64,000 bases of DNA from Bispira polyomma. Taxonomy: Eukaryota. Numbering within the stretch: the stretch's first letter is position 1; every line of letters starts with the position of its first letter. Positions 2,815 through 64,000 of the stretch are shown here, piece by piece. Under the pieces are notes generated by a model. The model ran no database searches and was not told where the DNA came from. It saw nothing but the letters and a program-made list of their open reading frames with translations. The stretch is from positions 7,006,001-7,070,000 of the forward strand of contig OZ287751.1 of NCBI GenBank assembly GCA_965649765.1, given 5' to 3'. The translations under genes were made by a program, and so were the position numbers.

Positions 2815-2884
2815 TTGGGGCTTTTACTACCCAGGGCTTTTACTACCCAGATATTGTTTTACATTTTTAATTGAATGTGTAGTC

Positions 2885-6411: not shown

Positions 6412-6414
6412 ATA

Positions 6415-18800: not shown

Positions 18801-19375
18801 GCGTATAGAATGATCAGTTTCATATATTCTGTGTACCTAGTAAAAAATCCTAACTATGTGGTTGTTAATAATAATATTTATTGGTTTAGTTGTTTTAATA
18901 ATTCACCATAATTTATTTCCTATGTTCAATACTTCGTTCACAATGGGGTTCTTGTTTTCCTAACTAGCACATGTGTGACTGGAAGGTGGAAATGTACTGA
19001 TGAGGTTTGTTCAAAAACCTGTTCTTTGCTGGGTTTCCAACATATCAATACCTTTGATGGACAGCAATATGATAATAATGGCCGTCCTTGCACAGGTGAA
19101 AAACCTGATTCTGGATACACATTGGTTGAGGTAAGAGGGGTTATTGTGCTTATTATTATTTATTTAATTTTTTGTCATCTCCTTATAACATGTATACAAT
19201 ATTTGTGTAATAATACTGCCAACAAAGTGGCATATATTAAACCAGCCAGCAAGTTTTGAACTAAGATACATTAAGGATATAAATTACAAATTTCTATTTA
19301 AAAGTCAGTGTATGATATTTTATACTAACAAGCTTATATATAAACACTAATGTATGATATTTTATACTAAAAAGC

Positions 19376-19417
<42 letters not shown>

Positions 19418-28400: not shown

Positions 28401-31400
28401 GAATTTAAAAAGAGGAAATGGTGTTGACACATTATATGATCCCCACATTGTGTACGGAAGAAATCCCATTCAAAACTAAGACTATTAAGCACAAATAGGA
28501 AACCATATTTAACAACAATTACTTCTTATGCATATATTCTTTATTTTTAGATGAATTCAAAACAAGCCTAAACCATTGTGTTAAATTTCAGATCTGGAAG
28601 TAAATGTGTTCCAGCAGATGAATGTAATTGCTATCATAACAGAGAGGCATATCCTCCACAAACTCAGTTAAAAATCAACTGTCAAGAATGGTAGGTTTAT
28701 TACTCACCCTTCAGTTTATATACCACATCCTCCCCTAGTAAAAGGACAATTGGCAATTGTAATTCCAACAATAAAGATTATGTAATCATAAGAGATAAAT
28801 GGGCCCCAATAGTTCTTTAAAAAATTGATATTTGTTTATAGAAATTGAAAATTATAGTTACAATTATTTTGAAATTTTCACTTATTTGGTTTTTTGTTCA
28901 GTTAGATTTTACAACTCAAACAATAATTTCACAAATAAATATATAATCTCTCTTAATTGTCACAAAATCATCAACACATAGATTTTGGCTGCTTTCAATT
29001 TGCTCACATATAGGCATCAAAGTATCCGATAACCTAAAGGATTTGATCATTTTTTCTGACTTTGTTTTTAATTTTTTTGTTCTGTTCATCAGTATATGTG
29101 AAAAGGGGAAGTTCAACTGTACAGGAGAGGAATGTCCTTTCGAGTGTGGCTTTGGATATGTGAGGTGTGGTCACACTGAAATCTGTATCCCCAAAGAGAA
29201 GCTCTGTGATGGTCATTATAACTGTCCTGATGGAAGAGATGAAGCCAACTGTGGTGTGTACCTATGTCGATTCCCACCTATAGAGGGTCATCCGAACACA
29301 ATTAAACAAGATAAATGCAATGTGAAACCAGTGCTAAAGTGCAAATACTAGAGAATAGTAAAAACAGACTATCACTAGACTATCGCCAGAAACTTTGTAA
29401 AATGACTATTATAACTAGTTTTTCTATAAAAACTAAATATGCATAGAATAATTAAATATTAGTATTTATCTGTAAAGTACCAAAGCTTTGGTAGAGACCT
29501 CGTATTGTAACGACAGAAACATTCAACCAAGTCATATTAGATTTATACTTTTCCATACAGCTATACGTATTAGACATGCTTTCAACTAAGATATCTTTGC
29601 CAAAAAAACACTTTTTTCACGGTATATCTTTGCAGATTTCGAGTGCAACTTTGGAGAATTTGAGTGTGTGACTGGTGGTAAATGTTTACCAATGAGCAAT
29701 GTGTGTGATGATAAGAAGGATTGTGCTGACAATAGTGATGAATATTATTGTGGTGAGTTGGAGGTTATTGTTTCAGTTATGTTACTGTTTATCTACGGAT
29801 TCATTTAACTAAGAAACTTGTTCGCTTAATTATTAAAACTGACTGATGCAAGTATAGTACCAGTGTTTTTCAACAAAACTAGTATGTAAAACAGTATTTT
29901 ATCATGCTTACAATCCTATATTGTGATGAGGATATATTCACTTTACCTGTGACAGTAAGAGATGCATATATTTATAATGCTTACATTTCAGGAGGTCCAT
30001 ATTGTGATGACGATATTCACTTTACCTGTGACAGTAAGAGGTGCATACCTAAAGGCTTTGTATGTGATGGAGACTATGACTGTGGTGTTGGTGATGACTC
30101 GGATGAACAGGATTGTGACAGTATGTGGAACATATTTGTTTACTTTTGAGTTGTCTTCATTTGTACACAGTGGATTGAGCTCTTTAATGACATCAGCTTG
30201 GTACATAGCCAATTTTAGGACATACAACATGTTTTACACCCTTCTTCTTGTTGTATTGAGATCATTTCCTTCTCACCCATTACCTTAATAATGTAATCTC
30301 TGCAAATGTTAGTTTTTAGTTTTAATATTTTGTAGATTTTGAATGTGATGGACTAAAATACTACAGGTGTGATAATGGAGTATGTCTTCCCAAAAATGTT
30401 AAATGTGATCACCATGACGATTGTGGCGATGGAAGTGATGAAAGTAACTGTGGTTAGTGGCCTTTTTCTTATCATGTATTATTATAGTAATAAGTATTCC
30501 TCATGTTGTGCAGATTCAGTTACTTAACCCTTTGAATACCTTTATTGTTGGCCACCAGTTGAGAGTGTTTATTATTCGAAGAAAATATATATGTTAGCAA
30601 AATGTTAGTCCGTAAAATTATTTTTGTTACAAAATTACACACAAGGTTGCTGTGAAATACCCTGAGTCATCTGTGGTATTTGTTTTAGTGACTATTAACT
30701 ATCCACAATCTATAATTCAGGAATTACCTGCAGTTCACTATAATACTATTTCTCAGTCGGCAAGGGTTAAAGACTGGTTTAAAAAAGAGTTATATCCTTT
30801 TACGTTTAAAGTTGTAGAAGACTGCTTAGATTTACTGTTTCATTGTGTTTATAATCAAATGTGATGAAATAAAATATAACAACACTGGCTTTTGAAAGAT
30901 TCTTTTTGTGTTTTGAAACAGTTTTGTCTGTAACACTTGAATGTATGAATAGCAATTTCCCCTATTCATTGGTAAATATCATATGTAAATCCAGTAGTAA
31001 TCCTGTGAGTTTCAACTTAAATTCTTGCCCTGCATCACCTAACTCTGGTGACTGCCGCATCCGGTTTAGAGATCCAGTGGGGATCTTAGTCATTCAGCAG
31101 AGATCCCCTTGTATTTGGAAGCGATCCACATCGCTTCAGGGTCATACACTAAAATCTAAATTCGAAATCGTGGAAACTGGATTTAAGGGAAGCATAACTG
31201 GTGCTCTCAAAGTTGTTCTAATTTTTTTACAGTATGGTGTGATGAAGAAATTATAACTGATGACACAAAGGCATTTGTTAAAATCGTTCCACAAAATATG
31301 GCTGATGTACTACAGAACTCAGGGATTTCTGTCCTAACACTTCCTTCCCCAACCCCCATCCTAGAGATGAAGATACTAGGAAACAATATTATTTTCCTTG

Positions 31401-34400
31401 AAATGCATTTCTGGTCAGAGAATCTTGATTTTGTAACAGCCACATTATATACGGCTGACAAAATAGAGGTTGATCAGGTATGAAAATTATCTGCTCATTT
31501 CAAACAAATACATAGTTGAATGTTTGTTTAGTATATGATGTTTGTGGTAAAATAATTATGTTAAACACTGTACTGTAAACACCGAACACATGAATCATTA
31601 ATTTCATTATTAATTACATCAAATTCAGTCATTAAACATAATAATAGCTTCCCTTTAAAATTAATTTATGTGACTATGTGTACAATCAAAGTAACCTAAT
31701 TGAACATACAACAGCTAGTATCATTATATTAAAGTCTGAGTAAATACAGCCCATGACACAATGCCTCATCTTGTCCAGAAATGCAACAATGCTATTTGTC
31801 TTTTTATGCCACAGAAATAGGGAAGTAAAAAAGAGAACTCCTTAGACAATGTCATATAGTGATATTTGCCAAAAAAACATCATGTTTCTTTTGTTTACTT
31901 TTCACAGGTGGAGATAGCTGCATATAATCCAGATATATATGACTTTAGTCAGCAATATTTTGGTCAGAATGGAACTTTTGCAACAATTTTAGAACTGTCT
32001 TTCCATCAAACAAGATCCAGTGGAGATATTCGCTTTGGTGGCTTATCTGTGCGAGCCTGTTTTGAACCATGTTAGTACAGATCAGTTTTATTTTTATTAG
32101 TACAAAATTAACTTAATCTGAATGTTTCACAATTTACTTTAGAGTTAATCTATTAGAATGTACATATGCCTTATTCTTAACACTCAAATTTATTGATTGT
32201 AAAATATATATTTTATATTTCCAGTTACTACAACACAATCCCCTACAACGAGTACAACGCCATCCCCTACAACAACAAGCACAACACTATCCCCTACAAC
32301 AACAAGTACAACGCCATCCCCTACAACAACAAGTACAACGCCATCCTCTACAACAACAAGTACAACACCATCCCCTACCACAACAAGCACAACACCATCC
32401 CCTACAACAGCGAGCACAACACCATCCCCTACAACAAGTACAACACCATCCCCCACAACAACAAGCACAACACCATCCCCCACAACACCATCCCCTACAA
32501 CAACAAGCACAACACCATCCCCTACAACAACAAGCACAACACCACCCCCTACTACTACAAGGACAGTAGAATGTACTTCTGGAGAGAAATCTATTGCCGT
32601 CAATGAAGAGAATATTGATCAATATTTTTATAACTTGAATTCTGAAACGAGAGACCTCATTCTCAAGACCGACATAATCATTCCTGAATTAGGTGAAAAC
32701 TCTACATTGATAATTGAACTGAAACAATGGACACTCAATGTTGGTGCAGAACTGCTGTCGTTTGAGTTAGGGATAGATGGTGCCAGAATGGTTGTTCTAC
32801 AGACTTACTACAGAAATAAAATTCAACCTGAAATTGAAATTGTAAGTATGGATACATAAAGCCAGTTCTCTCAATATCCCTGATATATATAAAAACTGGA
32901 GAGGTTTGTGAACAACTGATGAAAATTTTATTTTCCTAAAACTTACACTTTGAACAAATAGATGACTGTGAAAGTTCTTGATATTATTTCTATCTGATTT
33001 TGTTGTGCTGATATCATGCAAGATACAATATGACATCTTTATCTGCATTTATAATTCTATTTATGCCATATAACCTTACTAATTGAAATCACCATGTGCA
33101 TTGCAGCTTGACAAGTCAAGTGAATTAGTTGGTTTAGTTTGGAATCTACAGAAAGACATACAGATAAATCTCTATGAAGCTGCATATAAAATAGAACTTA
33201 AAGTTTTTCCAGAAGATACTTCGGCAATCATGGAAATCGAAAGCTTTCAAGTTGAGGCCTGCCTGCCAAAAGGTATTTAAAATACAACAAATCCTATATC
33301 ATTTACTACGTAAAATGCAATGTTGTACAACTAGCAAACATATTTCTGGTGATTTATAGTAATACAAAACATGATATTCTTAAAACTGCTTCAATCTGCA
33401 ATTGATATTTACTTTAAATAATGCAAGTTGTTTTTGACTAATGTACACAAGTTACTTTTGTTATTGACAAGGTACTTTTTGCATTAAAGAATTTTACTCT
33501 ATTGTATACAACGATTACAATGCTCCATAGAACTTATGATGTGAAGTAGGTGAAAGCATACACTTGTGAAATTGATAATTGCAGAAGTCTAGCTGTCTTG
33601 TATAATTAGCCATCAATGGTAGAAATGTTCGAGAGTATTAAGTATATAAAGATCTATTATTATTAATTCAGCATTTTATTAAAAGTATTTGCCAAATAGA
33701 TACATTGAACTGATTTATTTGAAAATCAATTAATTGTCACATTTTAAGCGAATGCAATAAAACCTCCAACAGTGAACATCTCAGAACGGTGAACGGTTCT
33801 GGGTCTCGTTTTGACACTGGTGAATAGTACAAAACCTCTGAGGAGTAAAGACCTCTTTATAGTGGACAATTTGGCTGGGTCCCATGAGCATGCACTATAT
33901 GAACGATTTACTGTATTAAGAGAGTGTAGCTGGTGATCACTGTATGTTTTTCACTGAGTTGTGACATTCTCCCTCTTTTCAGTAACAACTACCACCTCAG
34001 CTCCAACAACCAGTACCACACCAGTCTCCACATTTTCTACCACAACAGAGTTTGAAACTACACCCTTTGTTTCAACTATTATGACCACAAGTAGGTTTAT
34101 CCTATGTATAATATAGATTTTTTAACACGTGTCATATCACGACAGGCAGTTCACTGGCAGAGGAAATCAGGGCTGAGTAGGTGGTCAATGTTTTTTAGTT
34201 CAACCGGAAAACTGAGACGGTTGAACTGGTTCTAGTGTCTAAGCTGGTGCTGTATGAACGGAATGATTAACAGAAATATTTCTGATTTCTATATTTCCTT
34301 TTATCAAACTTTGGGAGATGTTTTATGTCTAAATAATTATCCTGTATCACAATATTTGATGCCAAATCAACTCTTCAATATCTATATATAATTCTTGACT

Positions 34401-37400
34401 CCATATATTTTTTTGACATTCATATGGTAGCTTTTTTGTTCATAATTTTATAGAACTCTTTTGCTCCACCCAAAAAAATACGGACATAACCATAGATGTT
34501 AAAAGTGGCATTAACCCAATTACATTCACAACTATTTCTTCCTTTATATGCCTCTAATATATTTAGCAAATCATTTAAACTTTTGACTACTATTCTTTTG
34601 TTATTTAGCTCCAAACATCTGTGCTGAGGGTGATGTGGTGGAGACGACATATTCAACATTATATTATGAAGCTGAAGTAACCGGTTGTTCATCTCCATCG
34701 TGTGAAAACCCAAAAAAGTCATTCAAAGATTCACCATTCTCAGATTCTGCACTGGCTTACCCCCAAAACTCATACTTCATAATTCACCCTACATTTGATA
34801 TGTCCTTCACAGTGATGCACATGTACCTCAGTGTCTATGGAAGTAAAATGATACTGATTGTGATCAAATATGGTGATAACAATGAATTTTTTAAAGAGAA
34901 GAGCGTAAGTCATTAATCCACAACTAATCACAATTTGGATTTTGTAAAACCAAAATTGACTGAAATTTTTCTTGTATTTTTCTTGAAAATTTAAATGTGC
35001 ATTTAATACATACACAATATTTTACATTCATTTTATGCCTTGTGCATAATATTAGTATTCATTTTTTTTTTGTATTTCAGCATTCCGAATTGGTATAACA
35101 AATTGACTATTGATGAACTCATTTATACTTTAAAATATCTTATATATATGCACTAAGTACATATTTTTCTTTAAAGACATGATAACAATTGTCATATTGT
35201 AGTTTTCCAATGCCAATGAGTGGAATAGCGTTGAAGTTGATATTCCAGCCGATGGTATCAAAAACTTAAAAGAAATAAGAATCATGTTCTTTGAATTAGT
35301 CGGCAGGGAATACAACGTCAAAGATATTGCAGTGCAATCTTGCTTTGGTGAAAAAAGTAAGCATTCCCATTTCTTTCTTACGTGTGTTTCTTCCGAGAAG
35401 TTCCCCATTTGACAATACTATTGCAGGCACAGTGTAGGAAAAGGGAATGAAGGATGCTCTGATATGTTACAATTGTAGTTTACAAACCACAATATGCATA
35501 AGTACTTGTAAACACACACTTATCAATATACTTTATTTTCAAAATTATACTATATGAAAAAGTATGACTACCTTCAAATCTCAATTAACACGCTGGAGGA
35601 GCAATAGATTTTTTTCAGACAATAAAAGGTTTATAAATTAGAAGAGTCATTTTATTGGAAAAAAAAACAATACAAAAACATGACTTTAAAACAGTAGGAA
35701 TAAGACCATAAGATTGAATATTCTGATATAACAAAGGTTTGAATAGTAGCAGTTCTACCGTGTTATTCCATTAATATTTTCTATATATCTCATATTTTTT
35801 ACTGAAATACACAAAACTTGACACTATTATAGCAAGCAATAATTTTTCATATTAGACAAACATTTACATCAAGTAAGATGAAATGTTTAGCCAACTTCAT
35901 CCACAAAACAGTACATATATATTTGTCTCATGTTGTTATACCAATTTACTACCAATATTTGTACTACCATTTTGAATCTTGATGTTTCCACAGTGACTAC
36001 TGCCACATCTCCTCCAGAATCAACAACATCTGTGGGAACTACCACAGGTCAGAGCTGATTACTTTTTATTATTTATTTATTCCCCCATATAAGATACTGG
36101 ACTGAGCACAACAGCTGAGCAGAGGGTTGTAAATCTTATACTGTGCCTTTCACAAAAGGTCACATCTCACAAAATGCAGGTTCTTTATTAACACCTGTAA
36201 CTGCTATATCTATAGAAAGTACCTTTACATTCATAATTGTCAAAGCTTACTTATTTACTTCAAATTTAATCATCTTTTGTTGTTTTATAGTGTCAGACTT
36301 TTACATGGAATTACTTGATTTGGTTCCATTTTCTTCATCATCATGATTTTATGTAATTAAAAATGTAAAAACATATCTTTTTATTTGAAACAAAAATATT
36401 TTGGACCTCTATATCTGGTCGCCCCAGACTGCAATCAAATCCAGGTCTTCTGTGTTTGTAAGTGAGCGTAGTATGCACTAGGCCACAGTGGTATATTCTC
36501 TTTTGTGCAAAAAAACAATTAGCATACCACAGCCATTTTTCTAGAGTATGGGGTTCAGCTATACCCCAGCCACTTTGTTTGTAGTTATTAAGTGTTCTCA
36601 AATGGCTTTCTAGTTAGGGAGTTGATCTAAAAATCAGTAGGTCCCCGCATCGACTGCCGCTGATACCGCTTGGTTCATTGGTAGGATAACATCCTTTGGC
36701 AAGATGTGAACATGTCGTTTCCTTGTGCTGACGACCCAGGGGCTACAAACTTGCTTCAATAATAATAATTATAATAACTATATATATTTGTCACTCCTGT
36801 ATTCTAATTTCTATACAGACATATGTTACCAGTATGAAGACATGGTGTATACCAAGGATGATTCTGAGCACTTTGAAGTTAAAGTTGTTGGTCCCAGCAG
36901 GAGACATGTGATTGCCTCTGATATTCTTCTCTCTGCTACCCTAACAAATGTAAGACAAAAAGTGGACACATATATGTTAGTAATCGCAGTCTATAGAGTA
37001 TTTATAACATTTTTTATTTTTGTCATGTTGGGAATTATATTAACAAATAACCGAAACATGTTATTTTATAGTTTTCACTCATTTTTGTTAGAATGTTTAC
37101 TTACTGCTCTACTGTAAATATCTTTTCTATACAGTCATAAAATAGTCAACTGCAACAAAGGGAACAACTACATTACACCGTTTGGTTGGCGGGTACATAC
37201 ATCTAAGGGCGGAATGTTACGATGATACATCAATACCAACGATTTTTTTTATTAATTTCTGGAATGATACTGACAGTTAGAAATTGTAAATGACATTTGC
37301 TATAATTGTTTCTATACGTATTTTTCTATATTTTACTTATTTTCAGATATCAATTACAGAGTCTGATATCATTATTGTTAGAACTGTTGGCCTTTTACCA

Positions 37401-52400: not shown

Positions 52401-55400
52401 CTTTGCAGCTGAAATTTTTTAATCACAGGGGAAAGTTTGATTGTAATATGTATTTTTGAAAGAATACTACTTACCAATTTCTAACATGCAAATTGTCCTC
52501 CTTCCTTTGCCTATAGAGTGGTGTCAAAATTTAAACAGAATATGATTGGTTGGGGACTAGGTCAGATAGACTAGGTGAGATACTCTGCTGAGTCACATTT
52601 TTGGTCAAGGTTGATAGTAGTTGTTTTTTTAACCTGTTGTTAACTTTTGATTCAAGCTTGTGCAAATGTTGAGTACACCTTACCTAATGTAATCATATAG
52701 AAGCATTAAGTAGGGGTTATATATTTGTCATTAACTGGTCTATATCCTCACAATGCGTGCATTTTGTTTTATTTCCAGTGGATACCACCCTCCTCAAACC
52801 AATACAAGTGTATATTACATATTGACATGCTAGAAGCTGAGGTGTATGAAGTAGTATTTGTCCTGGATGTGCCTGACATCAGTGAGGATGTTTCTGTGAG
52901 AGATGTCAACATTACTGGATGCATTTCTGAAGGTGTATTTTTATACAAAGTTATAATGTTTATGTTTTTATTTCTATAGCGCCACAATCGATGACCAGGC
53001 ATCCTCTGTGGCGCATATCCTAATAAGTGTGCAAAAGGATAGTCTGGTAGACAGAAAAAGGTTCGTGATTAGAGTTCAGTCGTGACCAGCAGATGAAAGC
53101 TATGATGAGAAAGCGAGCTGATACAGATGTGTTTTGACATTTTTTCTGAAAGACTTTTATCATTAGGATAGTCTTTAACTTTTCAATCTTGTGGTGTATT
53201 TTGTGTGTGCATATATGACAACTAATATCACAGTTCAGATACTGCTCTTTAGGGTACGAATTGTTTGTGTGGATCATAATTAGATTTATTATCATGGTCT
53301 TCCATGGCGAGGTAGTTAGGGAGTTGGTCTGGTGATCGGATCTTCCCTAGTTCACCTCGCACTTTTGCACCTATGTTTGTGGGTGGATAAACATCATTGG
53401 GAAAGTTGTGAACTCACCATTGCCCACTATTGATGACCCAGACTATGTTATATGACCTCTTTTTGGGGGAATAAGTCCCTTAGAGGATGGCACATTAATC
53501 AAGCACTATATAAATGCTCAATACTCATAATATTGCAGATTTATTTGTGTACTAATATTTCAATTCTATTTGTTTTTTTTACATTGAAGAAACCACTACA
53601 GAAACTACTTCTACTGTAGTACCAACAACAACTACCAGTGAGTTGAATTGTGTTTGCACAAATACATCAAGATACTTAAGATACAATAGAAACTCTATTT
53701 GATGAACAATTTCGGAGAGCAAAATTCTGTTAGCATAATAGAAGGTTCATAAAATAGGAGAGGCTTTTTATAATATGAACAATGGGAAATATGAATTTGG
53801 GAGAGTGAACATGTTCATAAAATCAAGTATATGGATAAAAAAAATAGAAGTTCTGATAATAGAGTTTCTGGTTCACTAGCACAACTTTAATACTTGTATT
53901 TTATAAATACTTGTACTTTAGAAGGGAACATTTCATGTGGGTATTACTGTCACCACTCTTTTTTTTCTATTGGGCTTCAATTTGTGTTGATTTTTTTAGA
54001 AGTAAAAATTATCAAGACTGACTATATCACATTACAAATAGTAGAACTAGTGATTATTTATATTATACTGAATACACATGCATGTCCTACAGAATGGCAT
54101 TATAGAATCTGTAGAACGAAAGGGAAAATGTAAATAGTATTTAGATATCTTCAGTCACACGGTAAAGAAAGCATATATTTTGATATCCACTTTCATTAGC
54201 TTTAACTGTTAAATACAACTAAGTGATGTAATGGTAACACACTTCCCTCTAACCTCATCAGCCGTGTGTTCGAATATTGGCCATGACTTATAAATGGTAA
54301 AGTTGGCAGAAGACTTGCTAAAGGCTAGCTGTTGGCAGAGCAGAGCACCTTGTGACAAACTACAATGTTCTGATTTTCTCCACCAGTGAACTTGATGATA
54401 TGAAACAAAATGTGTTGTAAGCAATGTAATGAATTGAATGTGATCTACACCATGTACATCTGTAATCCTGCATACTTTCTTTAATTAAACTGCATTTGAC
54501 ATGCGTTTTTTTTATTTAAAAACATTTCTACACATGAGATGAACTTTGTGTTTTAGGTGAAAGTCCATGTGTTTACTTGACTGGAAATCTGCTGGACAGC
54601 AATGTGTTGGGTCAGAGCTTTAGTCTCCGTGCATCCAGTAACGATGAAAAGACTGCCAAGGCATTGAAGGGCAGTGGGTCAGCGTGGAAAGCTTATAAAT
54701 CAGATGTAACAGACGGTGTGGTGACCTATACCTTTGAACTCGACTCTCCTGGTCAGTTGATGTACTTCCAGGCCACAGCCTACGGTGTGGAATCGATGAA
54801 ATTCAAAGTAAAACTTGCCGGAACTGCAGAATTCAAGCTATTTAGAAGTAGCATATTCTCAGATGGGGTGAGTTAAATACTGTTTCCATACACCCGTACA
54901 CGGCATCCGTAAACCTGTCCATCAAAGAGGCATGATGTTTCTATAACTGTGTATATATAGGTTTTAAGGCATAACTTTCTTTTTTATGGTCTGCTGTTTA
55001 AAATTCATTTACCTTTTTGTTCAGTGTCTCAGATCTTGACACCAAATAACCAAACTTATGTTACACAGTAGACCGAATAATCTGTCCCAATTTAGCAAGA
55101 TTCCTTGCTGATATTTTGACGACTGAATCACGAATAAGGCTTCGGCTACCATAAGCCACGCATTGTAAATCAAAATCAGCATATATAGAGATAGAATCTG
55201 GTTAAAATAAATATATACCCTCATTCCTTATATATGATGCCTACGTGGTACATATCAATTAATATAATATAAAAACTAAACCACAAACATTGGCACAACT
55301 CTGTCGGCCATGTTACGTCAGGCTAAATTTACAACGTTTTGCTTATGGTAGCCGCTCTGTTGCCAATCGGCTATACCTCAGTTTAAAATGCTGTCATCAG

Positions 55401-58400
55401 CAGCAGAATACTTGGTTACTCTAGTTACACAGCAGTACATATTTCTTGAAACTTCCACTGTTTGTATGGATAAAATTTCCCTTCTGGAGGTGTGTTTTGC
55501 GGAACTGTATGACTTACACAGATGTATATGGGAACACCCTAAAGGAAAATAGAACTGTTGATGTGTACATGTGATGCATGTATGAATAGCTTTTACGCCT
55601 GTATGAAAACCGGGCATTAGACTGCATCTTTTGTCTCGTGGTATTCACTACAAATGTTAAAATTTATTAAAACACATATCGAAGAAAATTGCACCCTCAT
55701 TCGCAATCATGGTATCTACTGACAAGGTTTCGATAATCTGAATTATAAATTCATTTTTACAATACTTGTTATTTAACAACATAGAAATAATATGAACTGT
55801 TTTACTTATATTTGGTTTGTTTATCCCACTAATTTGGCTTAGACTTCTTCAATGTATGGTGGATTTATAATATAATACCCAATAAAAGTATATTTATATC
55901 AGCCCAAATTCAGGAATACTTATAAACTAGATAAAAACACAAGATGTGGATTGAAATGGCCAGTTTTTTCAACTGACAAAAACTGTATATATTAAACCAA
56001 GCATACAATATCTTATCATTATTTGGAGATTTATGCAAAATTTTATTGATACATATACATGTATCAAACCAATAAAAACATGGACTTATTGGTAATTTCA
56101 TTTGTGCATATACAGCATTAAGGCTTCAGGAAAGACAGTAGACTCAATAAAGATAAGTATACATACACAGTTATAGTCAGGATCTCTGGAAAAGTTGTGT
56201 AGGTTTATATTAAAATATCTATAATTAGATATCTTCGGTGTTTGCATTACGTAAAATAATGTTCCATTTCTAGGTGAATCTTAAACAAAATGACAGTTAC
56301 AGTGACGTGTTGGAAATACCCAGAGTGCAGCTCAATACTGGAGATATAGTAACAGCAGTCAAGATTATAATGGAACCTATCAACCCAGAACAAGTTGATG
56401 TTTCATTGGACAATCTCTCTGTATATGCATGCTTCAATGGTATGCTTGACACTATTTGATATTTCAGTGTTACACTATACAAATAAACTACAAATTTTGT
56501 GTTATTGAATAATATATTTATATACACATGTGGAGAATGTTATAAACATATTTTAAGGCCTCACAATGTTCCAATAATTTTCAGCCTTCTTATAATTTCC
56601 CCACATTTTTGTCAAAACTTCCTTTTTATTTTTCTGAAAATATGTTGCCGTATAGCAAAAGTGAGTAATTGGGCGATATATAGCTAAAGTAAGGTGTCTT
56701 GTAAATCTCAGCGTACAATTTCAAAACAATGACTGCCTATATGTACACATATTCTAGCTATACATTCTGGCTATTTTGTTGAGATACTTCAGTAATTAGT
56801 GCTAAGGTTTTTCAGTTATTATGACCAAGCCTGTGTCACATGATAACTACTTCTACAAGTAATGCAGTGCAATGTTGCTTTTTATTACTACCCAAATTCC
56901 AATATGTTTCCACCATTGAGGTTGCCTGTATTTCTCCAATATTTTATGACATTCCAATTGGCCCCTTTCAATCCCTATAAGTTGCTGGCAAGCAGTCGAC
57001 CCCCTGAAAATATTCGCAATAGGATTTTGTTAGTAGTACAGCCAAAATGTTTTGTTAAAAAAATTATACGTGAGGCCATTATTGTATGCCAGAGGTAGTC
57101 TGTGGTGTGTGTTTTAGTGACTCCAACTATCTGTAATTTATTATTAAAACATTTTCTTCAGCTCCCAGTTCAGATAGTTTTCTCTAAAAAACAAACAGAA
57201 TTTTAGGCACTAAGTGGACAAAACACATCTATATCAGCTCGCTTTCCCACTTTAACATTCATCTGCTGGTCATGACTGAACTCTGATCACGAACCTTTTT
57301 CCGTCTACCGGACTATCCTCTTGCACACTGATTAGCATATGCACCACAGAGGATGCCTGGTCATATAAAAGTAAAAAAATTTACATTAACTTTTTCTTAC
57401 TTTTCAGGAAGTCTGCCCAGCACATCAACTGCCACAAGTAGGTCATCTTACCACAATTGTGCTATTACATAATAACATCATTCAATACAATGTTTCCAAA
57501 TGCTGTTTTTCAAAGGGGATGGGGTTTCTTCTGTAAAAGCCTATGTGTGACCCTACAAAAATACACAAAACCAAAATTGTTTGAATATCATGCAGAATTA
57601 ATTCTTAGTAATGGTTTGAAATACTTAAATGCAGATGTGTAATGCTTTAGACCTTAGATTATCCTATCTGGCCACAATTGTATTACTAACTGTATTTTAT
57701 TTTAAAAAAAAGATATTAAACTGCTCAAAGTGACATGAAACCCCAATAAACTTGTGATACCCAAGCATAAATGATTTTATTGATAGTAAAACCTTGCATA
57801 GAGTTGTGTAACTCAACTGGAACTCCTATTAGTAGACTCAAACCTTTGATTCCTTGAATAAATACATACCATCAATGATCAAGAAAATATAGACTGTAAA
57901 ATTTGTTTTCATTAAATAAGTAAATCTAAATGAACAATTATGGAATGGGAATTATGAATCTGTTTAAGTGATACTTTATCAAATAAGAAAGTGGAACTGT
58001 TTACAGTTATCCTTAAACAGAACTCTGTTATGTTAGAGTAATTAGCATTTGTACTTGGCCTTATTTTTAGAGATTGTTTGACAAATATTGGTTTTCCATT
58101 TTAGCACCTTCCTATCCATGTGATGGAGATTTACTAGAATTGGACTATAACACTCCCAACAAAGACGAAAAATTTGAAACCCGAGTAGTTGACGAGGCAG
58201 GGAGAGATGGGTCTTTCTTACGTGGCTCTAATGCACAATACACTGCAAACTCAGATCTACTTACGGTGAAAATGGATTTAGTTGGCGACAACATTTTTAG
58301 TATGGCTGGATATCGTTTTGTTGTTATAGGTGTCCAAAATATAACAATTGTGATAACCACTCCAGATAACGTGAGCACCGCCCTCACACCAGACCAGGTT

Positions 58401-61400
58401 AGTATTTGTGAGAAGTTTCGGGGTTTTTTTGTGTCTTCCAAATGAATATATGTTTGTACTTAATGAATATATTGATAACATTTTGTACTAATATAACCCC
58501 ATAATACACACCATTTACATCTATTCATCACGCTTGGTAATTTAACCAGGAAAAGAAGTTTGAGAAAAAAAGAACGAAAATAAGCCTAAGTTTTTGCCAA
58601 GTCAAACACTTTTTGTGGATACCACCCCTGCTTATATAACCAGTTATATATACCCTTTTTCTGTAATAAAGGCCCCCTCCTTTAACATCCCCCCCTTCTA
58701 TAAAAAGAAGGAAAAGTGAAAAAATGTTAAAATAGTGAGTTATATTTTAAAATTGCAATTTGTACGATAATGCAGATCACCATGACATGTAAATTACTTA
58801 CAGTGACCTGCGGTCAAGCATCCAGGTATTTTGTGGCTCAATATATTACATTCCCACATATCAATAATGTTTTTTGTTGTAGTGTCAAATTGTGCTAATT
58901 TATGCACGTATATAAATCATTAATCACTAGTAACAGACTTTCTAAAATGGCCTGGGAGAAAAGAAATACTGTTTTTAAGAATAGCCCCCCGTTTTGGGAA
59001 AAAGCCCTGGCGATGTTTATCTGCAGAATTGACAGCATATAGCTTTATGTCTTTCTTGCTTAAAGGATAGCTCTGTCCTGGATAACCCTGGCAGACCACT
59101 TTTGGTTGCTTCACCGGCGGATCCAACTAATGCTGTCGACATCAAGTCTCTATCTATTGTGCTCACTAAACACAATGATGTAGAGAATGTCACCATTAAA
59201 GATCTGGTATTATTTACATGTGAACACCAGACCACAACACCAAGCCTAACAACTACTACCCCAGGTAAGTGTTACTGTCACTACAGACTGACGATAAAAT
59301 ACAGGCCCCAGTTTCACAAAGCCCTACTAAAATTAGGATATAGTATCCTACTAAATCCTAAGTTAGTAGGGCAATAGTAGGTGATTTAGTATAATACTAA
59401 AGTGTTTCACTAAAGCTCTACTAGTGATGTACTAAATCACTGAGATAGTAGAGCTACTAAAGTTAGAAGGATACTATTTGCCTTGGAAACAAAGTCACAT
59501 GACCTTTTACACAACAGCAACAATGGCTGAATTTGATGGTCAACTTTGTCCACCTGAAAAAAAGAAAAGGCCAAGGGGCAAGAATTACACAAGTCAGGAG
59601 TTAGAATGTTTAGTGGTTGAGGTAGAAAAGAATAACAAGATTTTACAAAGCAAATTTTCGGACACCATCACTAATGCTAAAAAGCAAAACCTTTGGAAAA
59701 CTATTGCTAGAGCTGTAAGTTCTGTCAGTTCTGTGTCACAAAGTAAGATATATCCACTCAAAATTACTACACTGTGAAAAACCTTTAATTTTTGTACAAA
59801 ATATGTAAATTTCATATACACACTGAAGCATACGACATTTTACACATTTCTCTACTAAATTTAGAAGACCTAAGTTGGTATCCTAAATTTAGTAGAGAAG
59901 TTAGTAGAATTATTTTGATAAGATGCCTTTGTGAAACACAAAAGTTAGTAGTGTCTTATACTTAGTATCCTACTAAATATTTAGTATCCTACTAACTATT
60001 TAGTATTCCACTAAATATTTAGTAGCGAAATTAGAATAACCTACTAAATATTTAGTATCCTACTATCTTAGTGAAACAGATAGTAGGATGTTAGTAGGCT
60101 ACTAGTATTTAGTAGCATACTAAGTAGATAGTAGGGCTTTGTGAAACTGGGGCCAGAAATACTAATGTCTTCACACAATGTCTTCACACAATGACAGTAT
60201 ATGGAGAGGCAATAAGAGATGGTTTTAAAAGCCATGATCCCTATCTGTAACTTCCCCTAAGTTTAACTTCATTTCCAAACCTTCTGCAGTCGCCCATATC
60301 AGGCGGAAGTTTTGGGTAGGGTATTTCCGCAGCACTACTGTATGTCCGTCATAGTAATAATGTTTTTCTGCCGTAACTCTTCTGTGCCAGTAATTGTTTG
60401 TTTCTGTCTGTAAAACTTATCTGAACATGTATCAGGGGTATATTTCCCCCAGATGAAACAGCTGATTTAACAGGTGGCAAGGCAAGTTACAAGACCTTCT
60501 GGTACTGCCCATCATACCCCCACTATGTGAAAGGGTCATAATATGTCAACTGGGTTTCAACAGTTTGAGAAACCTAGTTTACAAAATAATGGAGGTGCAG
60601 ATATTGCAAGTGCTTTAAATACTCAACTATCAATCTTTGACTGTTATGTTATATATAAGATTTTCTAGAATGTTATACAAATACATCATTTTTTGCCTTG
60701 ATTAATCTCTCATAGGTAATTGTGCCACAAAAAAGTCAACAGTTATAATTATGGGGGATATTGAAAGTAAATTTATACACATACACCTGTAGTATGTACA
60801 TATGAGTTATACCACTTAAAACACCACACATAATCACCTATATAATCAACCGAACAGGCATTTTCATATTTTCTTTGTTAGATAATTTTTTAGCTATACA
60901 TCCCACACTAGTAGTATTGTTAAAGGCCATTTCAACACTGGAGCCATATCGAAATGGGACAATGTCAACACCAAAAAATTAAGTTAACTCATCGTGGATT
61001 GAAAAATTAATCCTCAGCTAGTATTGGAAATGTTGTTAACAATCTGACCTGAGAAATTTTAACATAACTCCAGAACGTATATTTGGGTGTTTAAACGGGC
61101 CCCTCAAAATCGGGTGCTATTTTAAAATCACCCCTGATGTCAAAACGGCATATTACTACTATTACTACACTATCATGCAGTACATTTAATTTGATATTTT
61201 TAGATTACAAGTTATGTTATACTTTTCTTACAGGTGTATGTGAACCAACGGAAAATGAAATAACCCTGAAGGATCTCAGGTTAATAAAGAAGCAAAACCA
61301 AGACAATAGTGGATCTGAAAACAGTGTAATAACTGACAAGGAAGTGAGTGCTTCTCTGGGTTCTAGAACCCTTGGGCTGTTCTCAATATTACACTATTTT

Positions 61401-63424
61401 ATTCTATTCCTTAGTGGTATGTTTAATATCTGGGGCCGTATTCACAAACATTCTTTGCATAAAATTCTTAGATTTTTCTTAGTTTCAGCCAATCAGATAT
61501 GCTTTGAAACAATACTTTTTCAACTAGTCAAATTAGTTGTGAATATTAGTCCTGTACTAGTGGATTCCAAGGTGCAACAAAACAACTGGGATTCTTCATT
61601 GTGTAGATAAAATCCCTATCCTTGACATGATGGGATTGGTAAGGCTGGCTTAGGGAAAGGCTCTGCTAAATAGTAATTTTTTAACCATCTGCGGAAGGAT
61701 GATATAGAATAAGTAGTATGCATATCATGAGACAGATCATTAACAGTTAAATTCTTACATATTCTTTCTTTCAATATTGTTTACACAATTTAGTTGGCTA
61801 AACAAATATAGGATTGCTTCCCTTTGCTGGTCATTAGAACTTTAGATCGTTTAGGCAGTGGCAGCAATTATGGCAGTGAAATGTTAAAATAAATGAACAA
61901 ATCTATAATACATTGTATAATTTATATAATGATCAATGTTCTTTTTTTATATTTAATCTAGGTGTGGATGGGAAATGATGATCAATTAATCATCAAATCA
62001 GCAGGCTCAAAGTCATTCAGAGTTACAGCTCTTGCTTTAGAACTTGTGAAAGTTGTCAACTTCACTGTGACATATAAACCACTAGGAGATACTCACAAGG
62101 TATGTTATTTTTTTACATAAGTAGATACCAAAAAATGGCTGAGAAAAAAATAGCTAAGATTCTAGATCATATAGCAAACTTTTGAAGTTACTACAGGAAC
62201 AAACATATTTTAAACGATTACAAAGGTAATGCATATGTATTTTCATTAACTTTAGTATTAGTCAAAGATGACAAACTAATAATGAGAACAAAATGTAGTG
62301 TCTGAAACAAGCATAAATCTTTGTTGGCATTTGTGTAACTCACATAATTTAATTATTTCTGTGAATCTTGTTATTGCAGATTCTAGTCAATGACACAAAA
62401 AGGACACATGTTCATGTACCGGTCGAAATGAACATAGAAATAGAAAAAATTAGGTTCCAATTTTACTCCACCAGCGGAGAACAAAAAGTGAAGAATATTC
62501 AGCTAAAAGGGTGCATAGAAGCACAATCTACTACAACATCTACAACACCTGCTCCCACAACTACATCTACAACACCTACTCCTACCACAACATCTACAAC
62601 ACCTGCTCCTACCACATCTACAACACCTGCTCCAACCACAGCATCTACAACACCTGCCCCAACCACAACATCTACAACACCTGCCCCAACCACAACATCT
62701 ACAACACCTGCCCCAACAACTACATCTACAACACCTGCCACAACCACTACATCTACAACACCTGCGCCAACCACTACATCTACAACACTTGCCCCAACAA
62801 CCACACCCACAACACCTGCCCCAACCACAACATCTACCACACCTGCCCCAACAACTACATCTACAACACCTGCACCAACAACTACATTGACAACACCTGC
62901 ACCAACAACTACATCGACAACACCTGCACCAACAACTACATCGATAACACCTGCACCAACAACTACATCTACAACACCTGCCCCAACAACTACATCTACA
63001 ACACCTGCCCCAACCACAACATCTACCACACCTGCCCCAACCACTACATCTACCACACCTGCACCAACAACTACATCGACAACCCCTGCTCCAACTACTA
63101 CATCTACAACATCTGCCCCAACCACTACATCTACAACACCTGCCCCAACCACAACATCTACAACACCTGCTCCAACCACAACATCTACAACCCCTGCCCC
63201 AACAACAACATCTACAAGCCCTGCCCTAACAACAACATCTACAACACCTGCCCCAACCACAACATCCACAACACCGGCTCCAACCACAACATCTACAACA
63301 CCTGCTCCAACCACAACATCTACAACCCCTGCCCCAACAACAACATCTACAACCCCTGCTCTAACCACAACATCTACAACACCTACCCCAACCACAACAT
63401 CTACAATAGCAGTTTCAACAACAA
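11681..63424 (+). CDS. Giant secreted SCO-spondin-like / gel-forming-mucin-like glycoprotein (multi-exon, ~67 exons, 3' end beyond window)
   Basis: Chain of exons with compatible phases (GT-AG, one GC-AG), from ATG 11681 ([20 protein letters not shown], signal-peptide-like) to an open donor at 63424/63425. Domains: EMI, EGF, TB-like, 3x VWD-C8-TIL, 4x LDLRa, then PTS linkers and a repeated 2-Cys domain. Confidence 0.9.
13625..14451 (+). CDS. Exons: EGF-like domain (13625-13726) and TB/8-Cys-like domain (14245-14451)
   Basis: [27 protein letters not shown], then YCFKDKHC...[16 protein letters not shown]...CTMCP. Both are phase 1-1 exons and both are missed by the ORF track. Confidence 0.8.
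14560..15020 (+). mobile_element. Degenerate 3' fragment of an L2/CR1-clade LINE
   Basis: Remnant peptides FKTVVLVYK and SPKLWNDLP...[13 protein letters not shown], typical of L2/CR1 ORF2 C-termini, followed by a (GATT)n-like tail. Confidence 0.65.
15192..18345 (+). CDS. VWD1-C8-TIL-E assembly
   Basis: Exons 15192-15376 ([15 protein letters not shown]), 15674-15950 ([10 protein letters not shown]), 16264-16349 (FGNAW), 16876-16989, 17319-17517 (C8; YSREC...NWRTSTLC) and 18102-18345 (TIL). Confidence 0.92.
18968..24932 (+). CDS. VWD2-C8-TIL-E plus D'-like TIL-E
   Basis: Exons 18968-19130 (HINTFDG), 19564-19743, 20383-20520, 20841-21008 (YGLCGTMDG), 21246-21486 (C8), 22198-22456, 24228-24429 and 24838-24932. 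Confidence 0.9.
19378..19414. repeat. (TA)n microsatellite
   Basis: Uninterrupted TA run in an intron. Confidence 0.9.
20535..20685. mobile_element. Degenerate Tc1/pogo-type MITE
   Basis: CAGTAGAAC..TATTATCCGAA ... TCGAATAACAGAG..CACTA ends. Related copies at ~41340-41513 and ~53683-53870. Confidence 0.5.
23217..23865. mobile_element. Solo LTR (probably Ty3/Gypsy), 649 bp
   Basis: TGTGACGA...TCGCCACA termini with a 4-bp TSD ATAT (23213-23216 and 23866-23869). GC-richer than the flanking intron. Confidence 0.85.
25358..28690 (+). CDS. VWD3-C8-TIL-E assembly
   Basis: Exons 25358-25634 ([14 protein letters not shown]...[10 protein letters not shown]), 26227-26368, 26886-27219 (DGLCGNFDD), 27497-27606 ([15 protein letters not shown]...WRSKRFC), 27933-28077 and 28592-28690. 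Confidence 0.93.
25880..26130 (+). mobile_element. Degenerate L2/CR1-like LINE 3' fragment
   Basis: Remnants [11 protein letters not shown] and FRKHL resembling the 14560-15020 fragment. Confidence 0.4.
29093..30452 (+). CDS. Four LDL-receptor class A repeats
   Basis: Exons 29093-29253, 29636-29752, 29992-30120 and 30336-30452, each ending CD..xDC.D.(S/R)DE..C. Confidence 0.93.
31233..37824 (+). CDS. Repeated 2-Cys domain copies 1-4 with PTS linkers
   Basis: X1 31233-31477+31908-32070 (WC...VRAC); X2 in 32225-32841+33107-33272 (VEAC); PTS 33983-34090; X3 34609-34904+35203-35356 (VQSC); PTS 35994-36047; X4 36819-36949+37347-37499+37668-37824 (VVTC). Confidence 0.8.
32225..32560 (+). repeat. 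Coding minisatellite, ~27-bp unit encoding TTSTTPSPT (mucin PTS)
   Basis: Tandem ACAACAAGY-ACAACACCATCCCCT units. The same unit recurs at 38073-38207 and ~43620-43735. Confidence 0.92.
34120..34225 (-). mobile_element. Truncated inverted copy of SINE family 2
   Basis: TCATATCACGACAGGCAGTT..GGCAGAGGAAA..GGTCAA resembles the reverse complement of the 3' half of 40290-40547. Confidence 0.45.
36600..36778 (+). mobile_element. SINE family 1 copy
   Basis: TAGTTAGGGAGTTGATCT...GGTTCATTGGTAGGATAACATCCTTTGGCAAGATGTGAAC...GACGACCCAGG with an (AAT)n tail. Confidence 0.6.
38073..45134 (+). CDS. Repeated 2-Cys domain copies 5-8 with PTS linkers
   Basis: PTS 38073-38207; X5 38521-38819+39117-39273 (VAAC); linker 40591-40671; X6 41056-41330+41619-41775 (LAAC); X7 42148-42422+42758-42914 (VAIC); X8 43598-44010+44574-44751 (VEAC); PTS 45042-45134. 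Confidence 0.8.
39968..40208. mobile_element. Degenerate Harbinger-type MITE related to 1000-1699
   Basis: CAGGGACTGTATTCACAAAAG left end, CTTAG/CTAAG arrays, CTTTTGTAAGTACG right end. Confidence 0.5.
40290..40547 (+). mobile_element. tRNA-derived SINE (family 2)
   Basis: GGCCGCGGTGGCCTAGTGGTTAG (A box), GATTTCGAATCCC (B box), a non-tRNA body and a (CAAATT)n tail. Confidence 0.8.
45151..46432 (-). mobile_element. Relic of a second YR (DIRS/Ngaro-like) retroelement, gag-like 5' part
   Basis: Minus-strand ORF 46066-45830 begins [17 protein letters not shown], the same CxxCxxxHxxPVGxxC motif as the gag at 2885. The insert is bounded by (TA)n on both sides. Confidence 0.55.
46471..57437 (+). 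CDS. Repeated 2-Cys domain copies 9-12 with short PTS exons
   Basis: X9 46471-46763+47418-47589 (LLAC); 48310-48360; X10 49238-49515+50242-50401 (VKAC); 51254-51289; X11 52029-52312+52779-52932 (ITGC); 53590-53637; X12 54557-54867+56274-56439 (VYAC); 57408-57437. Confidence 0.8.
48480..48860 (+). mobile_element. Degenerate L2-like LINE 3' fragment
   Basis: Remnants GAFAVAAP and [10 protein letters not shown]. Confidence 0.55.
49538..49745 (+). mobile_element. SINE family 1 copy
   Basis: ATAGCCTAGTGGTTAGGGAG (A box)...TTGGCAAGATGTGA...TGATGATGACCCAGG. Confidence 0.6.
50451..50804. mobile_element. TIR MITE flanked by TA
   Basis: GGGGATGCCGTTTTGACACC ... GGTGTCAAAATGCCCACCCC imperfect inverted repeats with TA on both sides. 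Confidence 0.65.
51430..51905. mobile_element. Two SINE fragments in inverted orientation (Deu/Nin-domain-like)
   Basis: CTCCATCCAGGTGTATAAATGGGTACC...GAGAGTGAACAACTGGTTGA on + (~51795-51905), with a reverse-complement-like copy at ~51430-51560. Confidence 0.55.
52991..53136 (+). repeat. Dispersed ~146-bp repeat, inverted partner at 57219-57364
   Basis: ATGACCAGGCATCCTCTGTGG...AAAAAGGTTCGTGAT.AGAGTTCAGTC.TGACCAGCAGATGAA...GAAAGCGAGCTGATA.AGATGTGTTTTG. Confidence 0.85.
53300..53520 (+). mobile_element. SINE family 1 copy
   Basis: GTAGTTAGGGAGTTGGTCTGGTGATC...TGATGACCCAGACTATG...GGAGAATAAG-like body shared with 920-1877. Confidence 0.6.
57219..57364 (-). repeat. Inverted copy of 52991-53136
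   Basis: CAAAACACATCT...CCACAGAGGATGCCTGGTCAT is the reverse complement of the 52991 copy with scattered mismatches. Confidence 0.85.
58105..63424 (+). CDS. Repeated 2-Cys domain copies 13-14 and a long PTS exon
   Basis: X13 58105-58397+59066-59264 (LFTC); X14 61234-61343+61962-62099+62380-~62515 (LKGC), then ~300 aa of PTS to the donor ACAA|GTAAGT at 63424. Confidence 0.82.
59305..60153 (+). mobile_element. Internally deleted PIF/Harbinger transposon
   Basis: TIRs GCCCCAGTTTCACAAAGCCCTACTA / TAGTAGGGCTTTGTGAAACTGGGGC, CAG TSD (59302-59304, 60154-60156), subterminal CTACTA/TAGTAG arrays and an internal Myb/SANT ORF. Confidence 0.88.
59523..59777 (+). pseudogene. Truncated Myb/SANT-like (NAIF1/MSANTD-type) DNA-binding ORF of Harbinger
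   Basis: MAEF...[56 protein letters not shown]. Truncated before the third helix. Confidence 0.8.
61430..61554. mobile_element. Small Harbinger-type MITE
   Basis: CTGGGGCCGTATTCACAAA left end (same TIR as 1000-1699) and a degenerate GTTGTGAATATTAGTCCTG right end. Confidence 0.55.
62525..63424 (+). repeat. Coding minisatellite, 27-bp unit encoding TTSTTPAPT (~32 units)
   Basis: Tandem ACMACATCTACAACACCTGCNCCAACM units in frame with X14. Confidence 0.95.
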
Positions 63425-63749
63425 GTAAGTTAAATCATATTTTTTCAACTGTTGCCTTCACTCCTGTGAACATTCTTGTTACAATATTGTCCACAGTCTC
63501 TATAAGTATGAGCTTGATAGGTTAGCCCATCTTTACCTAATTTGATCCATGCATATTCATACGTCTTTAGTAATGTTTCAAATGTTTGCCAGATTCTATT
63601 AGTTCCAGTTTTTTACAATAATAATGAAGCAGTGTTATTGTTTTGAGCAAACCTAATGGCATCATCTAGGCATAAATAAAGTCATTTTGTAGTAAAATTT
63701 AACCATGAATCTTTTTTCTTTTAATTGGGTTACTTGAGATAAAAGCAAT

Positions 63750-64000
63750 GCTTCGTTGGACAATCTCTCTGTATATGCATGCTTCAATGGTATGCTTGAC
63801 ACTATTTGACATTTCAGTGTTACACTATACAAATAAACTACAAATTTTGTGTTATTGAATAATATATTTATATACACATGTGGAGAATGTTATAAACATA
63901 TTAAGGCCTCACAATGTTCCAATAATTTTCAGCCTTCTTATAATTTCCCCACATTTTTGTCAAAACTTCCTTTTTATTTTTCTGAAAATATGTTGCCGTA
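63750..64000 (+). repeat. Direct duplicate of ~56400-56652 (3' end of the X12 exon, its donor site and intron start)
   Basis: TTGGACAATCTCTCTGTATATGCATGCTTCAATG|GTATGCTTG...GAAAATATGTTGCCGTA is near-identical and runs off the window end. Confidence 0.92.

What the first reader, a model, noticed from the sequence alone, without database searches (positions are those of the whole stretch)
31233..62515. Array of at least 14 highly divergent two-cysteine domains strung on mucin linkers
Each unit is ~135-150 aa. It starts with a Cys, usually contains an (E/Q)L(M/L)(E/Y/S)(F/L/V) strand, and ends hydrophobic-x-hydrophobic-x-(A/G/S/T/I)-C. Units are typically bounded by phase-1 introns and split by a phase-0 intron at an equivalent position. 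Copies 11-12 retain discoidin-like features (LRASS...[11 protein letters not shown]; SSGWQP), so my inference is a degenerate F5/8-type-C, galactose-binding-like beta-sandwich closed by an N-to-C disulfide. The units sit where CysD domains sit in vertebrate mucins, but they have diverged strongly from one another. This could be a multivalent lectin or adhesion repertoire on a single polymer, and possibly an unmodelled domain family.
Basis: partly seen in the sequence, partly recalled or inferred. Interest (0 to 1): 0.8.

Follow-up and report, generated by a model that had tools for sequence, protein, structure and literature searches.

The report
Mucin strung with degenerate discoidin beads
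An invertebrate mucus-type gene carries about 31 small folded domains on sugar-coated threads; Pfam does not recognise them, but they are most likely heavily altered discoidin (F5/8 type C) domains, an extreme version of a mucin design already known from molluscs and their relatives.

Summary
A 39-exon model (31233-63424) is one open frame with 14 Cys-bracketed units of 126-153 aa, median identity 15%; 13 of 14 beat every shuffle. Beyond the window the array grows to 31 units of 15 types (77 exons, about 7,900 aa, no stop), between a VWD x3/LDLa head and a TSP1/TIL/cystine-knot-like tail: an SCO-spondin-like gel-forming mucin. Pfam, PDB-sequence and word searches find nothing for the units. 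They match post-LDLa units of mollusc SCO-spondin-like proteins (hhalign 94%), which match canonical F5/8 type C domains in register (88%); a chiton unit folds as a galactose-binding-like jelly-roll (Z about 10). The direct link to F5/8 type C is not significant, and no whole window unit could be folded. F5/8 domains in lophotrochozoan mucins are published (PMC4948705), and a scallop protein already has the bead-and-thread layout. A lectin repertoire is unsupported: only the two cysteines are invariant, and single types are amplified almost unchanged. A CysD-like structural role is more likely. No RNA evidence. The scan found the same design before in another gene of this genome (s1-691465). 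New variant of a known kind.

The parts
13531..14462 (+). EGF-like and TB-like exons of the N-terminal head (open frames that hold the exons)
   Evidence: Pfam EGF E 2e-4, TB E 0.005, both under cut-off
15125..28102 (+). Three VWD-C8-TIL assemblies (D1, D2, D'D3) of a gel-forming mucin / SCO-spondin head
   Evidence: Pfam VWD, C8, TIL on single exons; frames; big search with exon 26879-27220 returns mucins and SCO-spondin-like proteins
27486..27626 (+). C8-3 exon with the GGDC cysteine (MUC2 Cys1088 equivalent); the following TIL3 lacks the Cys1130-equivalent segment
   Evidence: side-by-side with vertebrate mucins, VWF, SCO-spondins, hemocytin; cysteine roles from PMC7599080; numbering match partly from memory
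28947..30452 (+). Four LDL-receptor class A exons
   Evidence: two confirmed by Pfam PF00057, two read from the sequence
31233..32070 (+). Unit D01 (2 exons)
   Evidence: 23 bits against mollusc-only profile
32225..33272 (+). PTS tract (27-bp repeats) and unit D02
33983..35356 (+). PTS exon and unit D03 (two extra Cys)
35994..37824 (+). PTS exon and unit D04 (3 exons)
38073..39273 (+). PTS exon and unit D05; its last exon ends in a GC donor
   Evidence: 48-52% identical to the unit repeated about 80 times in the neighbouring gene
40591..42914 (+). Linker exon and units D06 and D07 (no linker between them)
43598..44751 (+). PTS tract and unit D08 (39% identical to D02)
45042..47589 (+). PTS exon and unit D09
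48310..50401 (+). PTS exon and unit D10
51254..52932 (+). PTS exon and unit D11
53590..56439 (+). PTS exon and unit D12, the most discoidin-like copy
   Evidence: 21 bits against mollusc-only profile, 0 of 200 shuffles; its first exon alone folds with low confidence
57408..59264 (+). Linker exon and unit D13
61234..62520 (+). Unit D14 (3 exons)
62521..63424 (+). Long PTS tract, about 32 copies of a 27-bp unit
63748..64000 (+). Start of the first of two further 97-99% identical copies of block 56398-63754 (D13, D14, PTS); the array then goes on with 13 copies of a 15th unit type
   Evidence: DNA contigs carry the alleles of copies 2 and 3

Best explanation
The window holds the first two thirds of a secreted SCO-spondin-like gel-forming mucin of a lophotrochozoan-type invertebrate (roughly 10,000 residues, my estimate). 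The F5/8 type C (discoidin) domain that follows the LDLa repeats in this protein family has been duplicated as a phase-1 exon module into 31 copies of 15 types. The copies kept the jelly-roll core and the terminal cysteine pair but lost the discoidin signature and any shared ligand site. Most likely working: the chain polymerises through its VWD head and cystine-knot tail; PTS tracts are O-glycosylated threads; the units are compact, acidic, often N-glycosylated beads that space the threads and give many weak non-covalent contacts (self-association or packing, possibly calcium- or pH-dependent), the job CysD does in vertebrate mucins. Shown: exon structure, open frame, homology among units and to mollusc units, fold of a mollusc unit. 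Inferred: fold of the window's own units, the disulfide, secretion, polymerisation, glycosylation and the bead function.
For: Architecture. Homology: the window-only profile ranks post-LDLa units of Mya and Liolophura first among 278 proteins (iE 9e-4, 4e-3; reversed decoys at most 3.4 bits); window vs mollusc profiles hhalign 94%, E 1.5e-7; mollusc vs canonical F5/8C 88%, E 3e-6, full length and in register; column shuffles at most 17 vs scores 46 and 40; exon by exon E 4e-4 and 5e-6. A chiton unit hits PF00754 positions 14-126 at E 2e-4. Another chiton unit folds at pLDDT 73 and matches IFT25, CBM32 and F-type lectin domains at Z 9-11, rmsd about 3 A over 107-116 residues; top Atlas rows are PF00754 clusters, TM 0.65. 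15 of 18 intron-bearing PF00754 exons of this genome end in a phase-0 GTRAG donor at the matching place (distance check). For a structural role: only two Cys invariant, other conserved columns hydrophobic; mean net charge -9.6; 37 N-glycosylation sequons against 25 expected; single types amplified nearly unchanged (13 copies here, about 80 without PTS in the neighbouring gene); CysD's packing role in MUC2 (PMC7599080).
Against: The direct window-vs-canonical F5/8C comparison is not significant. No whole window unit was folded; the D12 first exon alone gave pLDDT 56 and no meaningful match. The mollusc units were partly found with the window profile. The fold is shared by IFT25, DOC and many CBMs, so it does not name a function. 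The Cys1130-equivalent is missing from D3, so head-to-head polymerisation may be weaker than in MUC2. There is no RNA and no direct test of self-association. Fifteen very different types are more than a spacer needs.
Confidence: 0.58

Rival explanations
1. Same origin and fold, but the diverged units are a repertoire of binding modules (glycans, microbes, particles or surfaces), each type with its own loops, displayed multivalently on one polymer.
For: The fold is that of CBM32 and F-type lectins; 15 types at about 15% identity persist with open frames; D02/D08 dN/dS about 0.8; related proteins occur in limpet adhesive mucus (PMC7333891).
Against: No conserved His, Arg or surface Trp and no F-type-lectin motif; Trp and Arg contents are less than half those of canonical F5/8C; dN/dS does not exceed 1 in the three pairs tested; recent growth has multiplied identical copies, not variants.
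Confidence: 0.25
2. The units are nearly neutral passengers: a once functional discoidin domain carried along in unequal crossing-over of PTS modules, kept only because it must fold to let the mucin be secreted.
For: Only core residues are conserved; dN/dS 0.4-0.8 is weak constraint; near-identical copies show as many replacement as silent changes.
Against: The same module with the same intron phases is kept in another animal's gene (L067) and in four mollusc classes of protein; the neighbouring gene is built of about 80 units almost without PTS.
Confidence: 0.1
3. The units are a beta-sandwich family unrelated by descent to F5/8 type C (a new family, or another jelly-roll) that happens to fill the same slot.
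For: No direct sequence link to canonical F5/8C; no Pfam, PDB-sequence, word-search or Atlas hit; best structural matches of the chiton unit are IFT25 and bacterial modules rather than animal discoidins.
Against: Two-step profile chain in register; PF00754 hit of a chiton unit; same slot and same intron position.
Confidence: 0.07

Closest known systems
Mollusc SCO-spondin-like / mucin-2-like proteins: Ylistrum balloti mucin-2-like (P0367), Liolophura sinensis SCO-spondin-like (P0217), Octopus vulgaris CAI9741631.1 (P0158), Mya arenaria XP_052794204.1 (P0096)
   Same: VWD-C8-TIL head, LDLa repeats, then two-Cys units of 125-145 aa alternating with PTS; units homologous to the window's; no Pfam call on them
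   Different: One to about eight units, mostly of one or two types and often near-identical; the window gene has 31 units of 15 types, further from the discoidin consensus
F5/8 type C (discoidin, PF00754) domains of lophotrochozoan gel-forming mucins and of hemolectin/hemocytin (PMC4948705)
   Same: Same slot after D3; terminal Cys pair; colinear strand pattern through the mollusc units; matching phase-0 intron position
   Different: Signature motifs absent from all 16 unit types examined; not detected by PF00754 or by a local canonical profile; hemocytins have further VWD assemblies after the F5/8 domains
Vertebrate SCO-spondin
   Same: VWD x3, LDLa, discoidin slot, TSP1, TIL, cystine-knot-like end; GGDC present and Cys1130-equivalent absent
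   Different: One canonical F5/8C domain, many TSP1 repeats and no long PTS tracts
CysD (Mucin2_WxxW, PF13330) of MUC2/MUC5
   Same: Small disulfide-closed domains interspersed in PTS tracts
   Different: No WxxW motif, two Cys instead of about ten, 140 instead of about 100 residues, different fold (PMC7599080); analogous position only
CBM32 and F-type lectin domains
   Same: Fold of the chiton homologue (Z 9-10)
   Different: No F-type motif, no conserved sugar-binding His/Arg/Trp in the window units

Membership tests
F5/8 type C (PF00754) | Score above the Pfam cut-off | tested here: not met
   No hit on first or last exons; a local canonical profile scores whole units within the shuffle range
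F5/8 type C (PF00754) | Signature motifs (WLQxD, TQG, FxGN, RxExxGC) | tested here: not met
   0 of 16 unit types for each; note the canonical comparison set was itself picked by some of these motifs
F5/8 type C (PF00754) | Cys pair at the two ends of a 130-155 aa domain | tested here: met
   The only invariant columns; the bond itself is not shown
F5/8 type C superfamily (descent) | Profile homology to canonical members | tested here: inconclusive
   Significant in two steps through mollusc units (94% and 88%), not directly (E 0.19)
Galactose-binding-like jelly-roll fold | Whole-domain structure matches the fold | tested here: inconclusive
   Met for the chiton homologue; the window's own unit could only be folded as one exon, pLDDT 56, no match
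F5/8 type C superfamily (descent) | Shared phase-0 intron before the FxGN-equivalent segment | tested here: met
   45-56 residues before the last Cys in all 14 units vs 45 in canonical domains; 15 of 18 PF00754 exons of this genome end there in phase-0 GTRAG; donors are predicted
CysD (PF13330) | WxxW motif and many cysteines | tested here: not met
   No WxxW in any unit, two Cys; no Pfam hit
F-type lectin / CBM32 | Conserved His...Arg-x-Asp...Arg or equivalent sugar-binding residues | tested here: not met
Lectins in general | Binds carbohydrate | not testable with these tools
   needs recombinant protein and glycan arrays
Gel-forming mucin (PMC4948705) | [quoted passage not shown] | tested here: met
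   (PTS fraction 0.52 over the array)
SCO-spondin-like group | LDLa repeats after D3; TSP1 and TIL towards the C-terminus | tested here: met
Gel-forming mucin | Both D3 inter-chain cysteines (MUC2 1088 and 1130) | tested here: not met
   First equivalent present, second absent, as in SCO-spondins and hemocytin
Gel-forming mucin | C-terminal cystine knot | tested here: inconclusive
   Cys pattern seen at L008:6448-7112; only a weak TGF-beta clan hit, E 0.02; appears to be followed by one more unit
Gel-forming mucin | Expression, secretion, O-glycosylation, gel formation | not testable with these tools
   no RNA run holds the locus; the signal-peptide exon was not located

The most novel reading that the evidence does not exclude
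The 15 unit types, with the related arrays in at least three other genes of this genome, are a functional repertoire of discoidin-derived binding modules with new, type-specific ligand sites, so that one secreted polymer displays many specificities and neighbouring genes tune valency by copy number (up to about 80 linkerless beads).
Probability: 0.2. Interest if true: 0.72.

Novelty: new variant of a known kind. Interest (0 to 1): 0.42.

Why it matters
It explains the large unannotated middle part of many invertebrate 'SCO-spondin-like' and 'mucin-2-like' proteins: it is filled with discoidin-derived beads that Pfam misses, so counts of F5/8 domains in invertebrate mucins are too low. It suggests that these animals use a recycled discoidin domain where vertebrates use CysD, which can be tested by expressing single beads. 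A profile built from these units would annotate the family. The design itself is already known; what stands out is the number and spread of unit types on one chain and the linkerless 80-copy neighbour.

Tried and rejected
No result: Pfam on first and last exons; word search with the first-exon alignment, which sees only 55-175 aa proteins; PDB sequence search; Atlas feature search of the D12 exon; hhalign against this genome's own partial PF00754 exons, probability 1.6% and wrong register; local canonical F5/8C profile against window units; exon-only HMM scans of the 386 fetched proteins, nothing significant; folding the D12 first exon and searching with it; RNA runs; supplements of PMC4948705. 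Rejected: CysD (no WxxW, wrong size); CUB, EGF or other Cys-rich modules (two Cys only, no Pfam hit); chance frames (39 of 39 exons in phase); pseudogene (no stop in 77 exons); pure assembly artefact for the downstream triplication (DNA contigs carry the copy 2/3 alleles, though these runs may be the source sample).

Full report
Observation. The window is G000:C4:7006001-7070000 of a 1.035-Gb, AT-rich animal genome. From the sequence I placed 39 exons between 31233 and 63424. A script confirmed AG acceptors, GT donors (one GC donor at 39274), matching phases and 2,744 codons without a stop. The frame holds 14 units bracketed by two cysteines, 126-153 residues apart, separated by Pro/Thr/Ser tracts, several built of 27-bp repeats. 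Each unit is cut by a phase-0 intron 45-56 residues before the closing Cys. Median identity between units is 15%, yet leave-one-out profiles put 13 of 14 above all 300 shuffles; D01 is marginal.

How the spliced model was handled. All searches of outside libraries and both folding jobs used single exons by reference, or database proteins by id. Joined units were assembled only inside local scripts from coordinates, for alignment, statistics and scans of proteins already fetched; they were not sent to any search or folding service. The joined search and the whole-unit fold were left out.

The gene. Upstream lie EGF- and TB-like exons, three VWD-C8-TIL assemblies and four LDLa exons. Downstream the block 56398-63754 is repeated twice more at 97-99% identity, followed by 13 near-identical copies of a 15th unit type, each with a PTS tract of different length but the same phase. 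The whole array is 77 exons, about 7,900 residues, no stop, 31 units (the last exon end was not resolved by the script). Then come TSP1 and TIL exons and a cystine-knot-like pair of exons. This is the SCO-spondin layout with a mucin body. D3 keeps the GGDC cysteine but lacks the second inter-chain cysteine segment, like SCO-spondins and hemocytin (roles from PMC7599080, matching of MUC2 numbers partly from memory). No RNA run holds the locus. DNA contigs show the alleles of copies 2 and 3 of D13 and a depth about three times that of minor contigs, which fits a real triplication but is not independent proof.

Paralogues. The first-exon profile finds about 80 near-identical D05-like units at a 1,307-bp period in a neighbouring gene (C4:6.803-6.915 Mb) with VWD exons upstream, and weaker arrays on C3 and C2. 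That unit has the same two exons and phases but only a 7-residue linker. dN/dS is about 0.4 for D05 vs that unit and for D05 vs D06, and about 0.8 for D02 vs D08: coding, weakly constrained, no excess of replacements.

What the units are. Pfam, PDB sequences, the word search and the Atlas gave nothing. I therefore fetched full-length relatives through the conserved head. A profile of window units alone ranks first, among 278 proteins, the two-Cys units that follow the LDLa repeats in Mya and Liolophura proteins (iE 9e-4 and 4e-3); iteration adds those of Ylistrum and Octopus and converges, with reversed decoys at most 3.4 bits. The Ylistrum protein already shows VWD x3, LDLa, then PTS alternating with such units, without a Pfam call. 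A gene in another animal's assembly (L066/L067) has the same head and the same phase 1-0-1 unit exons; two of three units tested beat all shuffles. A profile of mollusc units alone scores D01, D12, D15 and D02 at 23, 21, 14 and 10 bits, above all shuffles. Profile against profile: window vs mollusc 94% (E 1.5e-7), mollusc vs canonical F5/8C 88% (E 3e-6, full length, in register), window vs canonical not significant. Exon by exon, without joining: E 4e-4 and 5e-6. One chiton unit matches PF00754 positions 14-126 at E 2e-4, under the cut-off. The chiton unit closest to the window profile folds at pLDDT 73 as a galactose-binding-like jelly-roll: IFT25 Z 10.7, F-type lectin and CBM32 domains Z 9-10, with factor VIII and retinoschisin lower in the Foldseek list; the top Atlas rows are PF00754 clusters. 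The D12 first exon alone gave an unreliable model and no match. The intron falls where canonical F5/8C exons of this genome end, and the slot is where vertebrate SCO-spondins carry PF00754. I put descent from F5/8 type C at about 0.85-0.9; formal PF00754 membership is not met.

How it probably works. Established for the family: VWD heads and cystine-knot tails link mucins into polymers, PTS tracts carry O-glycans, and CysD domains among them make non-covalent contacts needed for MUC2 filament packing (PMC7599080). Seen here: only the two Cys are invariant, the other conserved columns are hydrophobic, discoidin and F-type-lectin motifs are absent, the units are acidic (mean net charge -9.6) and carry 37 N-glycosylation sequons against 25 expected. 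Recent growth has copied single types almost unchanged. I infer compact beads that space the glycosylated threads and supply weak multivalent contacts, a CysD-like job done by a recycled discoidin (0.58 for the whole statement). A binding repertoire (0.25), neutral passengers (0.10) and an unrelated fold (0.07) are the rivals.

What is known. PMC4948705 states that the F5_F8 domain is characteristic of lophotrochozoan mucin-like proteins and occurs in gel-forming mucins of protostomes, hemichordates and cephalochordates. PMC7333891 reports an SCO-spondin-like VWD/LDLa protein in limpet pedal mucus. My paper searches found no description of degenerate, Pfam-invisible arrays, but the library is incomplete. 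Other notes call the animal a probable annelid; I did not test the taxon.

Verdict. Real, correctly described, and mostly correctly interpreted as to fold. It is a new variant of a known kind: a known mucin design pushed to 31 beads of 15 types that have drifted out of Pfam's reach. The lectin-repertoire idea is open but unsupported. Interest 0.42.

Noticed in passing
G000:C4:6803047-6914690 (loci L029-L036): Neighbouring paralogous gene with VWD exons upstream and about 80 near-identical D05-like units at a 1,307-bp period, joined by only about 7 residues: a beads-only chain without PTS threads.
   Followed up: partly
G000:C3:40.37-40.49 Mb (- strand), C2:81.9 Mb, C5:9.27 Mb: Weaker matches of the unit profiles in tandem; the C3 and C5 places have VWD exons upstream, so at least one or two more genes of this kind.
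   Followed up: no
L008:6855-9190 (about 47-49 kb past the window end): The cystine-knot-like exon seems to end in a phase-1 donor without a stop and to be followed by one more two-Cys unit (130 aa) that ends the frame; it scores only weakly (1-3 of 300 shuffles). A domain after the knot would be unusual.
   Followed up: partly
window 39274: GC-AG intron after the last exon of D05; the matching intron in the neighbouring gene has a GT donor.
   Followed up: yes
window 63748-63790: The duplicated block begins with the last 42 bases of the D12 exon and its donor, without an acceptor: a breakpoint inside an exon, left in an intron.
   Followed up: partly
window 2780-7197 +: Retroelement with three overlapping or adjacent frames: Cys/His-rich first frame, reverse transcriptase with RNase H, and a third frame with a faint integrase SAM-like hit (E 0.15); DIRS-like by layout, not tested further. 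Observed only.
   Followed up: no
window 59436-59774 +: Myb/SANT-like frame (PF13873, E 5e-14) inside the intron between D13 and D14, probably a PIF/Harbinger remnant; copied with the triplicated block.
   Followed up: partly
window 52954-53136, 57280-57360, 40286-40541: Short interspersed repeats in introns, with copies elsewhere in the fetched DNA.
   Followed up: no
L009 (about 53.5-55.1 kb past the window end), - strand: Single 528-aa open frame that reads like a BTB/BACK-domain protein, just downstream of the mucin gene.
   Followed up: no
P0158 (Octopus CAI9741631.1), P0367 (Ylistrum), P0217 (Liolophura), P0096 (Mya XP_052794204.1): Annotated mollusc proteins whose unannotated middle holds the same degenerate discoidin units; the Mya model's second half looks like a PTS tract read in the wrong frame.
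   Followed up: partly
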